Sequence record: NC_030884.1 | Length of the DNA stretch: 32,995 nucleotides | Strand: one strand, 5' to 3' | Shown: one piece after another, positions 1,561 through 32,995 of the stretch | Layout: every line of letters begins with the position of its first letter | How positions within the stretch are numbered: the stretch's first letter is position 1 | Program-made: the position numbers and the translations under genes | The notes under the pieces: generated by a model | The model's input: the letters and a program-made list of their open reading frames with translations, nothing else | The model's database searches: none | Told to the model about the DNA's origin: nothing

Positions 1561-1584
1561 ATAGATTATGTTGGGGAAAGAAAA

Positions 1585-2504: not shown

Positions 2505-2520
2505 TTTATTAGTGAGAAAT

Positions 2521-2862
2521 ATGGGCTATCAAGATATTCCAAATGAAATAATTAAACTAAGCGAAAAATATGTGAAAATTGTCGGAGAAAGAAAAAATAT
2601 ATTTAAAACTTTAAGAAGAAAAAGTATCGAAAAAAAGATAATAGAAAAATTTGAAAAATTTTGTGATATAATTCCATTATATATACTTGAAAATATACTT
2701 AAACCAAATAATGTTTTTGAATATAGTTTCGAAAAAAGTTATAAAAACAAAAGTGAGAAAATTGAAGTTATTACTAAAGCTAGACTAAAATTTAAATATG
2801 AAAATTATGAATTAAAATTATTAAGTGTTAAATTTGAAAAATCAATTAATCTAATTTCATAA
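2521..2862 (+). CDS. Basic 113-aa hypothetical protein, possibly a very distant AcrID1-fold member
   Basis: ATG 2521 after SD GTGAG; C-terminus RLKFKYENYELKLLSVKFEK resembles RLFFEKRNNMLKLTKIELEK of the 30584 ORF. Confidence 0.6.
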   Translation: MGYQDIPNEIIKLSEKYVKIVGERKNIFKTLRRKSIEKKIIEKFEKFCDIIPLYILENILKPNNVFEYSFEKSYKNKSEKIEVITKARLKFKYENYELKLLSVKFEKSINLIS

Positions 2863-6664: not shown

Positions 6665-6835
6665 TTAACCGCCTCGTTTTTGCAAATACTCTCTTATTGC
6701 TTCTTCTATAGCTTGAGTTAATTGAAGATTATTTTTTGCACAGTATACTTTCAGTCTAGTTTTCAAATCCTTGTCCATATAAATTCCAAATACTGCTTTT
6801 TGCTTCTTTTTTTGACTCTGTTCTTGAGTTTGCAT
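6665..6835 (-). CDS. svtR: Ribbon-helix-helix repressor SvtR (56 aa from ATG 6835)
   Basis: MQTQEQSQKKKQKAVFGIYMDKDLKTRLKVYCAKNNLQLTQAIEEAIREYLQKRGG matches recalled SIRV1 ORF56b; RHH pattern. Confidence 0.9.
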   Translation of the reverse strand: MQTQEQSQKKKQKAVFGIYMDKDLKTRLKVYCAKNNLQLTQAIEEAIREYLQKRGG

Positions 6836-6859
6836 TTTTCCTCGTTTGTTCATTTTGAT

Positions 6860-7320: not shown

Positions 7321-7587
7321 ATCCAGCGTAGAAAGTATATATGCCTAAGAGTTCCAAGTGAAGTAAAACAAATTTTTTACGAAAAAAGAGAAGAGATAAA
7401 AAAACAATTAGATGATATTTTAGAAGGAAAAAGAACACTAGAAATTAAAGAAACTGCAGATTTATATGATGAAAAAGTATTCTTTACAGTAGATATGTTA
7501 TATTATGCGAAATTGCAAGAATTATCAAAAAAATATAAAAAACCATTATCGAAAATAATCAGATCTGTATTCTTTAATCTAAGTTAA
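7321..7587 (+). CDS. Cryptic tandem RHH-like protein (~88 aa) lacking a canonical start codon
   Basis: Stop-free frame 7306..7587: IQRRKYICLRVPSEVKQIFYEKREEIKKQLDDILEG..EKVFFTVDMLYYAKLQELSKKYKKPLSKIIRSVFFNLS; SD-like GAGGTG 7308..7313; T-rich tract after stop. Confidence 0.6.
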   Translation: MQRRKYICLRVPSEVKQIFYEKREEIKKQLDDILEGKRTLEIKETADLYDEKVFFTVDMLYYAKLQELSKKYKKPLSKIIRSVFFNLS

Positions 7588-13335: not shown

Positions 13336-13377
13336 TATAAATTTGTCATAATACATAATATATAATAGTGATAGGAC

Positions 13378-28620: not shown

Positions 28621-28923
28621 TTAACTTTCAAATTGACTTTTTAATTTTTCTGCTATGCTAGAATGCATACACAAAAACTTTTTGTTTCTTTTTACTTTTT
28701 TAACTTTTATGAAAAATATGCCTTTCTCTACTAATCTCATTATCCTGAAATAAGCATATGGTTGATATTTTTGTGCATCTTGTTCAAATAAAGTTAGTTT
28801 ACCATTAGAATTGTACATGGAAATACATAGATCTCCAACCTCATCCTTTTGTGCAATTGAAAAAAACTTTTGTAATAACTCTTTTTGTTTTGACCTTAGA
28901 CTTAACTTTATTTGTTCAGTCAT
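28621..28923 (-). CDS. 100-aa basic hypothetical protein (from ATG 28923), candidate anti-defence gene
   Basis: SD GGTGA and class A promoter directly upstream; the track's 12 extra residues are promoter sequence. Confidence 0.75.
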   Translation of the reverse strand: MTEQIKLSLRSKQKELLQKFFSIAQKDEVGDLCISMYNSNGKLTLFEQDAQKYQPYAYFRIMRLVEKGIFFIKVKKVKRNKKFLCMHSSIAEKLKSQFES

Positions 28924-28954
28924 TTTTCTTTCACCAATATACATTATGTAAAAA

Positions 28955-28994
28955 CTCATATATAAAGCTTTCTCTCAATTTTTACGTTTATAGC
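28955..28994 (-). promoter_or_regulatory. Class A promoter
   Basis: Minus strand AAACGTAAAAATTGAGAGAAAGCTTTATATATGAG. Confidence 0.72.
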
Positions 28995-30148: not shown

Positions 30149-30403
30149 TCACAATTTTTTAGTACGCACTATTTGAATTTCATATAATAAATCTTTTTCA
30201 TTATCTGTTAACTCCATAGTATTAATTCTTATCTCAATATTATCGTTTAAAGGATAAATAAATTGACTAAATGCTAATTCAATTAATTGCCGATAATCTT
30301 CTTCATTAATTTCAAAAGAAATCTTAAATTTTAAACTTAATTCTTGTATATTAGAATCTTCAAAAAACAAATCTATAATTTTTTTAACTTCTTTAAAACT
30401 TAT
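30149..30403 (-). pseudogene. AcrID1-family paralog with ATA at the expected start (pseudogene or non-canonical start)
   Basis: Leader TTGGGGAAAGAAAA identical to that of acrID1 but followed by ATA; (M)SFKEVKKIIDLFFEDSNIQELSL aligns from residue 1. Confidence 0.6.
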
Positions 30404-30583
30404 TTTTCTTTCCCCAATATTTCCATAAAAATATGACAATTTTATATTTTTACATCTTAAATTTTTCTATCTGCAGAATTAGTATCTGGAAAATGAAAAA
30501 AATTCGGCATAGCTTTAGCTAATATTTAGAAAAGAAAAAAACAAACTAAGAATTAAAAAGAAGAAAAAGAAAAAAAGAAAGAC

Positions 30584-31632: not shown

Positions 31633-31803
31633 TTACCAACAGTCTTCTAAATATTTCCTGACCTTTTTCTCACTGATTCCTAGTCCGTATGCAATCTCCT
31701 TAACTGTAAACCCTCTTTTGACTAACTCATGAACTATGCTAACTAGGTCATCCTCACTTTCAATATAGTACGTTTCTCCTTCAATTATTACTTCTTTTTT
31801 CAT
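31633..31803 (-). CDS. 56-aa HTH protein, paralog of 1193..1360 (Aca8-like)
   Basis: ATG 31803; YYIESEDDLVS..IAYGLGISEKKVRKYLE; the 92-aa track call runs through the promoter. Confidence 0.85.
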   Translation of the reverse strand: MKKEVIIEGETYYIESEDDLVSIVHELVKRGFTVKEIAYGLGISEKKVRKYLEDCW

Positions 31804-31834
31804 TTCTCTTTCACTGATATCATATATGTAAAAA

Positions 31835-31878
31835 CTCATATATAAATCTTTCTCTAAACTTTTACGTTTGTATCTCTC
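31835..31878 (-). promoter_or_regulatory. Class A promoter straddling the right ITR boundary
   Basis: Minus strand GAGAGATACAAACGTAAAAGTTTAGAGAAAGATTTATATATGAG. Confidence 0.75.
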
Positions 31879-32995
31879 GACTTTCAATAAGAAGTTTCCA
31901 ATTTTTATCATCGCTGCATATATAAATTGAAGGTTCCAATTTTTCTATCTCCAATTTTTTAAAAAAGGCCACTTTTTATTCCTAGCATGAAACAAATTGA
32001 TTACGAGCGGTGAAAAAGTCTAAAAGAATCTATTTTGAACTGAAGAATAATTATATAATTAATAACTACTATCTAGCTAATTAGCTAATATATATAATAT
32101 ACTAATTAACTAATTAGCATAATATACAAATATATAAATATTAAGATATTACGATTGTAATAATATTAATATATATAAAAAAATAATAAAAAAAAGAAGG
32201 ATAGTCCTCACTAACATAATTAAATGCCTTCTGCTAGTATTTAAACTTTTCTCTCTAAACTTCCAATTTCCTCCATTGCAAACGCAAAAAATTGAAGCAT
32301 AAATTACTAATTGCAAACTAAAAATTTGGAAATTATATAATATATTATAATATACGAATATGTTTAGTATATTTATAATTTTCAGCCGTAAAAGTTTTGG
32401 TTTCTCCTAATTATTAATTAATAATTTAATAGCTCCTAATATATATATATCTGGAAATGTATAATTATTTGGAATTTAGGAATTTACAATTAAGCAATTT
32501 TATAATATAAATTTCAACAAATGATAGAATATTTGGAATTTTGTAATTTCCAATTTACATAACTAATTGGAATAATTTTCCAAAGTGAACAATTAATTGG
32601 AATTTTGGAATTTTCAATTTTATTAACTTTTTGTAATAAATTTCCAAGGTGTACAATTTATTGGAATTTAGGAACTTAGGAATTTACAATTTAGTTAACT
32701 TATTGGAATATTTTTACAAGGTGTAGAATTAATTGGAATTTAGGAACTTCCAATTTATTAACTTTATTTTGAAAATTACGCAAAATGACAGAATAATTGG
32801 AATTTAGGAATTTAGGAATTTTCAATTTATTAACTTTGGTGCGAAAAAAACGAAAAAAACGAAAAAAATTGGAATTTCCAATTTATCTCATTAGTTGCGA
32901 AATTTACGCAAAAAATGAAAAAAACTCCTAATACCTTCTTAATGTTTTATAATTGTAGAGTAGTAAAAAGGAAATGGGAGTTTTTTTCATTTTTT
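31860..32995. repeat. Right inverted terminal repeat (1136 bp)
   Basis: Reverse complement of 1..1136; contains AATTTAGGAATTTAGGAATTT at 32801..32821. Confidence 0.95.

What the first reader, a model, noticed from the sequence alone, without database searches (positions are those of the whole stretch)
30149..30446. AcrID1 paralog whose ATG has become ATA: silenced reserve or leaky start
Seen: the 14-nt leader TTGGGGAAAGAAAA is identical to acrID1's (1571..1584) but followed by ATA (30403..30401); the downstream 84-codon frame is intact and aligns from residue 1 with MNYKE, MKFKE and MEFEE paralogs. The track's TTG start lies inside the TGTCAT promoter motif. Inference: recent single-base inactivation (e.g. 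a toxic or redundant Acr), a revertible switch, or attenuated non-AUG initiation, echoing the start-less gene at 7321.
Basis: partly seen in the sequence, partly recalled or inferred. Interest (0 to 1): 0.65.

Follow-up and report, generated by a model that had tools for sequence, protein, structure and literature searches.

The report
Anti-CRISPR-family gene with ATA start
A small gene of the archaeal virus SIRV3, from a known anti-CRISPR protein family, has ATA where its relatives have the ATG start codon; all five known versions share this old change, so the gene is either translated only weakly or is a slowly decaying relic.

Summary
The window is the complete SIRV3 genome, and the finding is gp42, annotated 30149..30439 (-) as "AcrID1 family anti-CRISPR protein".

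**Observation: confirmed.**
- The 14-nt leader at 30417..30404 is identical to the one before acrID1 (1571..1584).
- It is followed by ATA (30403..30401) and an intact 84-codon frame.
- That frame aligns from residue 1 with the paralogs and with the AcrID1 crystal structure 6EXP.
- The annotated TTG start lies inside the TATA + TGTCATA promoter module. SIRV2 and both SIRV1 alleles have an in-frame stop two codons after it.

**Interpretation: partly supported.** ATA is not a recent SIRV3 event or a consensus error.
- It is present in seven further independent SIRV3 assemblies.
- It is present in all four other alleles: SIRV2 gp50/ORF73, SIRV1 gp43, SIRV1-XX ORF96 and a SIRV1 variant.
- No ATG variant exists.

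**Evolution since the change looks neutral.** There are 27 substitutions spread 8/9/10 over the codon positions, with nonsynonymous to synonymous 21:6.

**One oddity:** the cassette is the most nucleotide-conserved gene of the genome.

**Best reading:** an anciently fixed start lesion, with the gene probably still transcribed and at most weakly translated from AUA.

**Context:**
- SIRV2 lacking gp50 is viable.
- This scan already reported the same thing for SIRV1 ORF75 (s1-165273).

The parts
30431..30446 (-). Core promoter module: TATA box directly followed by TGTCATA
   Evidence: Nine copies of this module in the genome, before gp03, gp04, gp07, gp10, gp12, gp15, gp38, gp42 and one at 13336. 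Conserved in all five alleles.
30437..30439 (-). Annotated TTG start of gp42 (rejected as a start)
   Evidence: Lies inside the promoter module, upstream of the expected transcript start. In SIRV2 (TAG) and in SIRV1 and its variant (TAA) an in-frame stop follows two codons later.
30404..30417 (-). 14-nt leader with a Shine-Dalgarno-like GGGG and an A-rich spacer, identical to the acrID1 leader at 1571..1584
   Evidence: Near-identical leaders precede the ATG of gp39 (28923), gp05 and gp06. SIRV2 has TTGAGGAGAGAAAA, which still has a purine-rich GAGG.
30401..30403 (-). ATA in the start slot, 43 nt from the first base of the TATA box
   Evidence: The start codons of gp04 (ATG 2521), gp07 (3949) and gp12 (7715) lie at exactly the same +43. 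ATA is found in all five alleles and in 7 extra SIRV3 assemblies.
30149..30403 (-). 84-codon AcrID1-family (DUF1374) frame plus TGA stop
   Evidence: Pfam PF07118, 34.6 bits (cut-off 21), E 2.7e-8, residues 3-50. 6exp_A E 0.003. AF2 model pLDDT 78.6; best Foldseek hit 6EXP, TM 0.80. 12-residue internal deletion relative to the paralogs.
30368..30376 (-). Codons 10-12 (ATA GAT TTG): the alternative starts used by other annotations
   Evidence: SIRV1 has ATG at codon 10 (gp43, 75 aa). SIRV2 ORF73 is annotated from the TTG at codon 12. Both would remove most of the predicted helix 3-15, and neither has a G-rich motif upstream.

Best explanation
gp42 is a true AcrID1-family (DUF1374) gene cassette whose ancestral ATG became ATA before the last common ancestor of all known alleles (SIRV3 gp42, SIRV2 gp50/ORF73, SIRV1 gp43/ORF75, SIRV1-XX ORF96, SIRV1-variant ORF73). 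Its promoter (TATA + TGTCATA) and its 14-nt SD-like leader are intact. I infer that it is still transcribed into a short-leadered mRNA. The only route to the full-length protein is then weak near-cognate initiation at AUA. Since the lesion, the coding sequence has changed in a way that cannot be told from neutral drift. It is therefore best seen as an attenuated, decaying paralog that the virus can lose, not as a recent SIRV3 mutation or a switch. The annotated TTG start, and the differing starts in the other genomes, are artefacts of gene callers looking for any canonical codon. Shown: the ATA, its conservation, the promoter geometry, family membership and the substitution pattern. Inferred: transcription, the transcript start, and the level of translation.
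For: ATA is present in all five alleles and in seven extra SIRV3 assemblies. Its position is fixed at +43 from the TATA box, as for the ATG of gp04, gp07 and gp12. The upstream TTG frame is closed by stops in three of the five alleles. Family membership rests on Pfam, PDB sequence and fold matches. There are 27 substitutions among the alleles, spread 8/9/10 over the codon positions. Nonsynonymous to synonymous is 21:6, against a neutral expectation of 73% nonsynonymous. The chance of no stop arising under neutrality is 0.30. The N:S ratio is higher than in the pooled ATG-bearing paralogs gp07, gp36 and gp37 (44:43, Fisher p=0.015). An aromatic residue (Y) that most paralogs have and a W conserved in most of them are lost, and there is a 12-residue deletion. 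SIRV2 with gp50 deleted is viable (PMC6315595). The gene is absent from the anti-defence gene list of PMC11065993.
Against: The frame is open in all five alleles. The model still folds confidently like AcrID1. The cassette is kept next to the pyramid gene in every Icelandic rudivirus, although the neighbours on both sides differ between viruses. It is the most nucleotide-conserved gene of the genome: 96.5, 93.2 and 94.8% identity to SIRV2, SIRV1 and XX, with dS 0.08-0.12 against 0.17-2.1 (mostly 0.3-0.6) for the other genes. This needs either a recent spread by recombination or some constraint. A high N:S ratio is also what an arms-race gene would show, and gp36, which has ATG, is not significantly different on its own (p=0.27). 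With 27 substitutions the tests have little power.
Confidence: 0.48

Rival explanations
1. Functional gene that uses AUA on purpose. The SD-like leader directs low-level near-cognate initiation, which keeps a dosage-sensitive or specialised AcrID1-like protein at a low level. The high nonsynonymous rate would then reflect arms-race diversification.
For: The leader is identical to that of the active acrID1. SIRV2 changes it to a better GAGG match. The frame is intact in 5 of 5 alleles and the predicted fold is preserved. The cassette is retained in all Icelandic rudiviruses and is unusually conserved. The same viruses have an unannotated RHH gene (7321..7587) that starts at ATC or ATT behind GAGGTG, with omega 0.12-0.33. 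In Haloferax, about 30% of putative alternative initiation sites were near-cognate codons (PMC7261190). An AUA start was proposed by annotation for SSV10 ORF D60 (PMC6080066).
Against: There is no protein-level constraint: codon positions 8/9/10 and N:S 21:6. Family-typical Y and W residues are lost. gp50 is dispensable in SIRV2. No expression data could be obtained.
Confidence: 0.3
2. Translation starts downstream, at TTG codon 12 (as SIRV2 ORF73 is annotated) or, in SIRV1, at ATG codon 10. This would give a 73-75 aa protein.
For: TTG at codon 12 is conserved in all alleles, and SIRV1 has gained ATG at codon 10. These are the annotated starts in SIRV2 and SIRV1.
Against: There is no G-rich SD motif before either codon. 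Either start would delete most of the predicted N-terminal helix 3-15, which is part of the conserved half of the family. Codons 1-11 are as well conserved as the rest.
Confidence: 0.07
3. The stretch is kept for a nucleotide-level role: a non-coding RNA, a DNA site, or a contribution to expression of the adjacent pyramid gene. The frame would be incidental.
For: It has the highest nucleotide identity of any gene between these viruses, and equally low change at all three codon positions. The 5' part is most conserved. It always sits directly upstream of the essential pyramid gene.
Against: The RNA fold is no better than shuffles (z = -0.03). For SIRV2 the high-identity tract runs on into the intergenic region and the start of the pyramid gene, and identity along the pyramid gene is patchy. 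This fits mosaic recombination. SIRV2 with gp50 deleted is viable.
Confidence: 0.08
4. One reading: a recent single-base inactivation in SIRV3, possibly polymorphic or revertible, or a consensus error.
For: ATA differs from ATG by one transition. The rest of the cassette is intact.
Against: ATA is shared by all five alleles from independently sequenced viruses and by seven further SIRV3 assemblies. No ATG variant was seen.
Confidence: 0.03
5. The database annotation is right: a 96-aa protein starting at TTG 30439.
For: The frame is open from that TTG in SIRV3 and SIRV1-XX.
Against: The TTG is part of the TATA + TGTCATA promoter module and lies upstream of the expected transcript start. SIRV2, SIRV1 and the SIRV1 variant have in-frame stops two codons later. 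The extra 12 residues have no counterpart in any paralog.
Confidence: 0.02

Closest known systems
AcrID1 (SIRV3 gp02; PDB 6EXP, 6THH) and the DUF1374 / PF07118 family
   Same: Same family by profile, sequence and predicted fold. It aligns from residue 1 and has an identical 14-nt leader. It lies in the same terminal cluster of small single-gene cassettes.
   Different: ATA instead of ATG. A different promoter class: TATA + TGTCATA rather than the early-gene consensus described in PMC11065993. A 12-residue internal deletion, and loss of a Y that most paralogs have and of the W that precedes the invariant R. No activity has been tested. Only 25% identical to gp02; the closest paralog is gp07 (30%), which shares the promoter type.
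SIRV2 gp50 (ORF73), SIRV1 gp43 (ORF75), SIRV1-XX ORF96
   Same: Orthologous alleles, 85-92% identical as annotated proteins (87-94% by tblastn over the 84-codon frame). Same position upstream of the pyramid gene, same promoter, same ATA.
   Different: They are annotated with three different start codons. SIRV1 alone has a canonical ATG, at codon 10, and a W at the family-conserved position.
Genes with near-cognate AUH starts behind a Shine-Dalgarno motif (the rudivirus RHH gene at 7321..7587; E. coli infC and pcnB with AUU, from my own knowledge)
   Same: An AUH codon at the proper distance from an SD-like motif, with no canonical start available in several alleles.
   Different: The RHH gene is under clear purifying selection (omega 0.12-0.33). 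gp42 is not. No autoregulatory logic is known for gp42.
Start-codon pseudogenes among duplicated accessory genes
   Same: Loss of the canonical start in one member of a multi-copy family, a neutral-looking substitution pattern, and dispensability.
   Different: No frameshift, stop or truncation in any allele. Promoter and leader are fully preserved, and nucleotide conservation is unusually high.

Membership tests
AcrID1 family (Pfam DUF1374, PF07118) | Sequence match to the family profile above the curated cut-off | tested here: met
   34.6 bits against a cut-off of 21, E 2.7e-8, but only residues 3-50 of 84 are matched. phmmer to 6exp_A gives E 0.003, residues 2-44 to 2-44.
AcrID1 family (Pfam DUF1374, PF07118) | Helix-strand-helix-strand-strand fold as in the AcrID1 crystal structure | tested here: met
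   AF2 model pLDDT 78.6, pTM 0.67. The best Foldseek hits are 6EXP (TM 0.80), 2H36 (SIFV0014) and 3DF6 (AFV1 ORF99), all family members. This is a predicted model, not a solved structure.
AcrID1 family (Pfam DUF1374, PF07118) | C-terminal aromatic residues typical of the SIRV3 paralogs: a Y before the last strands and a W before the invariant R | tested here: inconclusive
   The invariant R80 is kept. In most paralogs the Y position is aromatic; gp42 has E/L there in all alleles. The W is V in SIRV3, L in three alleles and W only in SIRV1. These residues are typical of the family, not formally defining.
AcrID1 family (Pfam DUF1374, PF07118) | Inhibition of subtype I-D CRISPR-Cas through binding of Cas10d | not testable with these tools
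   Shown only for gp02 and its SIRV2 homolog (PMC7689449). That paper notes that the contact residues are not conserved even between those two.
Near-cognate (non-AUG) initiated gene | SD-like motif at working distance, with no canonical in-frame start between the upstream stop and the conserved N-terminus | tested here: met
   GGGG or GAGG ends 8 nt before the ATA. In SIRV2, SIRV1 and the variant no ATG, GTG or TTG lies between the in-frame stop and the ATA.
Near-cognate (non-AUG) initiated gene | Evidence that the frame is translated: purifying selection, footprints or peptides | tested here: not met
   Codon positions 8/9/10 and N:S 21:6 fit neutral expectation. Reads could not be obtained. 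The tests have low power.
Pseudogene | Disabling lesion plus a neutral substitution pattern | tested here: inconclusive
   The start codon is lost and the pattern looks neutral. No stop or frameshift occurs in any of 5 alleles, but that has P=0.30 under neutrality. Nucleotide conservation is unusually high.

The most novel reading that the evidence does not exclude
Icelandic rudiviruses use AUH start codons behind Shine-Dalgarno leaders as a selected way to set very low protein doses. This would apply to ATA for the gp42/gp50 AcrID1-like protein and to ATC/ATT for the unannotated RHH regulator. In that case gp42 is a working, low-dose and fast-evolving anti-defence protein that recently spread by recombination through all these viruses.
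Probability: 0.22. Interest if true: 0.55.

Novelty: new member of a known kind. Interest (0 to 1): 0.3.

Why it matters
The gene is counted in databases as one of the many AcrID1 paralogs of SIRV1, SIRV2 and SIRV3, but under four different and mutually inconsistent start annotations. Knowing that the true start slot holds ATA in every allele has three practical consequences:
- It corrects those annotations.
- It warns against treating this paralog as an expressed anti-CRISPR when counting or cloning family members.
- It gives a clean natural test case for whether Sulfolobus ribosomes initiate at AUA behind a Shine-Dalgarno leader, because the neighbouring acrID1 carries the identical leader with ATG.

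If the gene turns out to be translated, it would be an example of start-codon tuning of an anti-defence gene. If not, it shows how duplicated anti-CRISPR cassettes decay.

Tried and rejected
- **Reads:** No raw reads or RNA data could be laid, and read laying was not used. Independent assemblies were used instead.
- **More alleles:** none were found. IMG/VR returned only SIRV2. GTDB genomes returned only SIRV3 DNA inside two actinobacterial assemblies. The metagenome scan found nothing. The word search of 5.8 billion proteins found 5 proteins. tblastn against phage records found the same five alleles and one weak paralog hit.
- **Papers not held:** Kessler 2004 on SIRV transcription, Quax 2013 on the SIRV2 transcriptome, and He 2018 on AcrID1. 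Published transcript starts and expression values for ORF73 could not be checked.
- **Structured RNA:** rejected, z = -0.03.
- **Out-of-frame 8-codon ATG mini-frame (30425..30399), whose TAA overlaps the ATA, as a coupling device:** rejected. Its ATG lies only 14 nt after the end of the TATA box, upstream of the expected transcript start, and the sister promoters of gp04 and gp07 lack it.
- **Protein-level selection in the N-terminal half:** rejected. The lower rate there affects synonymous and nonsynonymous sites alike: 7:2 against 14:4, my tally of the per-site table.
- **Not run:** Complex prediction and the large profile search. No binding claim is made, and the family assignment was already clear.

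Full report
**Identity of the window.** The window is the complete 32,995-bp genome of Sulfolobus islandicus rudivirus 3 (SIRV3; NC_030884.1 / KX712143.1). The finding covers gp42 (BHS13_gp42). RefSeq annotates it on the minus strand at 30149..30439, with a TTG start, as "AcrID1 family anti-CRISPR protein".

- The 14-mer TTGGGGAAAGAAAA occurs exactly twice in the genome. One copy is at 1571..1584, directly before the ATG of acrID1 (gp02). The other is at 30417..30404 (-), directly before ATA at 30403..30401.
- From the ATA, 84 codons run to TGA at 30151..30149.
- The translated frame hits Pfam DUF1374 above the curated cut-off (34.6 bits, E 2.7e-8, residues 3-50).
- Residues 2-44 align to residues 2-44 of the AcrID1 crystal-structure chain 6exp_A.
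- The frame aligns from its first residue with six SIRV3 paralogs. It has one 12-residue internal deletion (A2).
- An AlphaFold2 model (pLDDT 78.6) has the order helix 3-15, strand, helix, two strands.
- Its best PDB matches are 6EXP (TM 0.80), SIFV0014 and AFV1 ORF99, all family members.

**The annotated start is an artefact.** The TTG at 30439 is part of a 16-nt promoter word, a TATA box directly followed by TGTCATA, at 30446..30431.
- This word has nine copies in SIRV3. They lie before gp03, gp04, gp07, gp10, gp12, gp15, gp38 and gp42, with one more at 13336.
- The start codon lies exactly 43 nt after the first base of the TATA box in gp04 (ATG 2521), gp07 (3949) and gp12 (7715). The ATA of gp42 is at the same +43.
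- Sulfolobus promoters start transcription about 26 nt from the TATA centre (established knowledge). I infer a transcript start near 30419..30415 and a leader of about 12-16 nt holding the G-rich SD-like motif.
- In SIRV2 the codon two places after the TTG is TAG. In SIRV1 and a SIRV1 variant it is TAA. The 12-residue extension therefore cannot be coding.
- Gene callers have consequently given this gene four different starts in five records: 96 aa in SIRV3 and SIRV1-XX, 73 aa in SIRV2 and the SIRV1 variant, and 75 aa in SIRV1.

**ATA is old, not recent.**
- All five known alleles have ATA: SIRV3, SIRV2 gp50/ORF73, SIRV1 gp43, SIRV1-XX ORF96 and SIRV1 variant AJ703805.
- The exact 96-aa conceptual product, which includes the Ile encoded by ATA, is also found on 14 contigs.
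- Seven of these are independent assemblies that are 99.7-100% identical to SIRV3 and show ATA.
- No ATG variant was found anywhere. This excludes a consensus error and a recent SIRV3-specific mutation, and gives no support to a polymorphic switch.
- No further alleles exist in IMG/VR, GTDB genomes, JGI metagenomes, phage records or the 5.8-billion-protein collection.

**Evolution of the frame since the lesion.**
- The five alleles differ at 27 sites in 252 nt, spread 8/9/10 over the codon positions.
- Twenty-one changes are nonsynonymous and six synonymous. The neutral expectation is 73% nonsynonymous, with 4.4% of random changes creating a stop.
- The chance that 27 neutral changes create no stop is 0.30. 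An open frame in all five alleles therefore proves nothing.
- The N:S ratio is higher than in the pooled ATG-bearing paralogs gp07, gp36 and gp37 (44:43; Fisher p=0.015). It is not significantly higher than in gp36 alone (p=0.27).
- An aromatic residue (Y) that most paralogs have is replaced in all alleles. The W before the invariant arginine is kept only in SIRV1.
- All this fits relaxed constraint. An arms-race gene could look similar, and the power of these tests is low.

**An unexplained oddity.**
- gp42 is the most nucleotide-conserved gene of the genome against SIRV2, SIRV1 and XX: 96.5, 93.2 and 94.8% identity.
- Its dS is 0.08-0.12, against 0.17-2.1 (mostly 0.3-0.6) for the other genes.
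- Synonymous differences between SIRV3 and SIRV2 are fewer than in the adjacent essential pyramid gene (p=0.005).
- For SIRV2 the high-identity tract continues through the downstream intergenic region into the start of the pyramid gene. Identity along that gene is patchy, with 100% blocks next to 83% blocks.
- SIRV1 and XX have almost identical core genes yet differ at gp42 and the pyramid gene.
- The simplest explanation is mosaic recombination: a younger common ancestor for this roughly 450-bp cassette.
- A nucleotide-level function is not excluded, but the RNA folds no better than shuffles (z = -0.03).

**Could AUA be used?**
- The leader is the same as that of the active acrID1. SIRV2 changes it to TTGAGGAGAGAAAA, which matches the anti-SD better (anti-SD from my own knowledge).
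The frame 7321..7587 (+) has no ATG, GTG or TTG start. It begins with ATC in SIRV3 and SIRV2 and with ATT in SIRV1 and XX, 6 nt after GAGGTG.
- That frame is under purifying selection: omega 0.12-0.33, codon positions 15/6/23. AUH initiation is therefore plausible in this host-virus system.
- In Haloferax, about 30% of putative alternative initiation sites were near-cognate codons (PMC7261190).
- An AUA start was proposed by annotation for SSV10 ORF D60 (PMC6080066).
- None of this shows that gp42 itself is translated.
- The downstream candidates, TTG at codon 12 and ATG at codon 10 in SIRV1 only, lack an SD. Either would remove most of helix 3-15.

**Literature.**
- SIRV2 gp50 (ORF73) is listed as an accessory gene. 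It was deleted without loss of viability (PMC6315595).
- The study of regulatory sequences of archaeal anti-defence genes (PMC11065993) describes the early-gene consensus that precedes acrID1 and re-defines gp01/gp45 as Aca8.
- Its supplementary list contains nine SIRV3 entries but none for gp42, SIRV2 gp50, SIRV1 gp43 or CAG38862. gp42 carries the other promoter type, TATA + TGTCATA.
- From memory, Kessler et al. 2004 described a conserved GTC just after the TATA box of SIRV promoters. That paper was not held, so I could not check it.
- I found no paper that mentions the ATA.
- An earlier agent of this scan reached the same reading for SIRV1 ORF75 (s1-165273). My tests agree with it.

**Verdict.**
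- The "recent inactivation / revertible switch" reading is wrong.
- I put about 0.48 on an anciently fixed start lesion in a dispensable, drifting AcrID1 paralog that is at most weakly translated.
- I put about 0.30 on a functional gene deliberately using AUA.
- The remainder goes to a downstream start, a nucleotide-level role, a recent inactivation in SIRV3, or the annotated TTG.
- The gene and its family are known. What is new is a start-codon correction and a testable case of near-cognate initiation, so interest is modest.

Noticed in passing
L019, L020; L008-L014: Near-identical SIRV3 DNA, including a 31,951-bp contig, sits in the published genome assemblies of Streptomyces gamaensis CGMCC 4.7304 and Planomonospora alba JCM 9373, in a third assembly (GCA_016415665.1), and in at least four unrelated SRA runs. 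This is almost certainly contamination or a spike-in, not biology.
   Followed up: partly
window 7321..7587 (+): An unannotated 88-codon ribbon-helix-helix-like frame with no ATG, GTG or TTG start. It begins with ATC (SIRV3, SIRV2) or ATT (SIRV1, XX), 6 nt after GAGGTG. It is under purifying selection (omega 0.12-0.33). Already reported by this scan (s1-165201).
   Followed up: partly
window 2512..2521, 6835..6853, 28923..28959, 31803..31911: Other annotated starts appear to lie inside promoters or SD motifs. In gp04 the GTG at 2512 is the SD, and ATG 2521 sits at +43 from the TATA box. In gp10 the ATG at 6853 is only 22 nt from the TATA start; ATG 6835 fits, and the orthologs are 56 aa. In gp39, ATG 28923 follows the leader TTGGTGAAAGAAAA. 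gp45 is Aca8, starting at 31803 as stated in PMC11065993, not a 'terminase small subunit'.
   Followed up: partly
window 30149..30446 against SIRV2, SIRV1 and XX: The gp42 cassette is the most nucleotide-conserved gene of the whole genome between the Icelandic rudiviruses, with dS 0.08-0.12 against 0.17 or more (mostly 0.3-0.6) for every other gene. The upstream neighbour (gp43 slot) is a different, unrelated gene in each virus. This points to cassette-wise recombination.
   Followed up: partly
L003 (SIRV1 gp43), codons 10 and 79: The SIRV1 allele alone has gained a canonical in-frame ATG (codon 10, from ATA) and a TGG (W) at the family-conserved tryptophan position. Five of its six private changes are nonsynonymous. 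This could be chance or a partial rescue of the gene.
   Followed up: no
window 30399..30425 (-): An out-of-frame ATG opens an 8-codon mini-frame whose TAA overlaps the ATA (ATAA). The ATG is conserved in all five alleles but lies only 14 nt after the TATA box, so it is probably not transcribed.
   Followed up: partly
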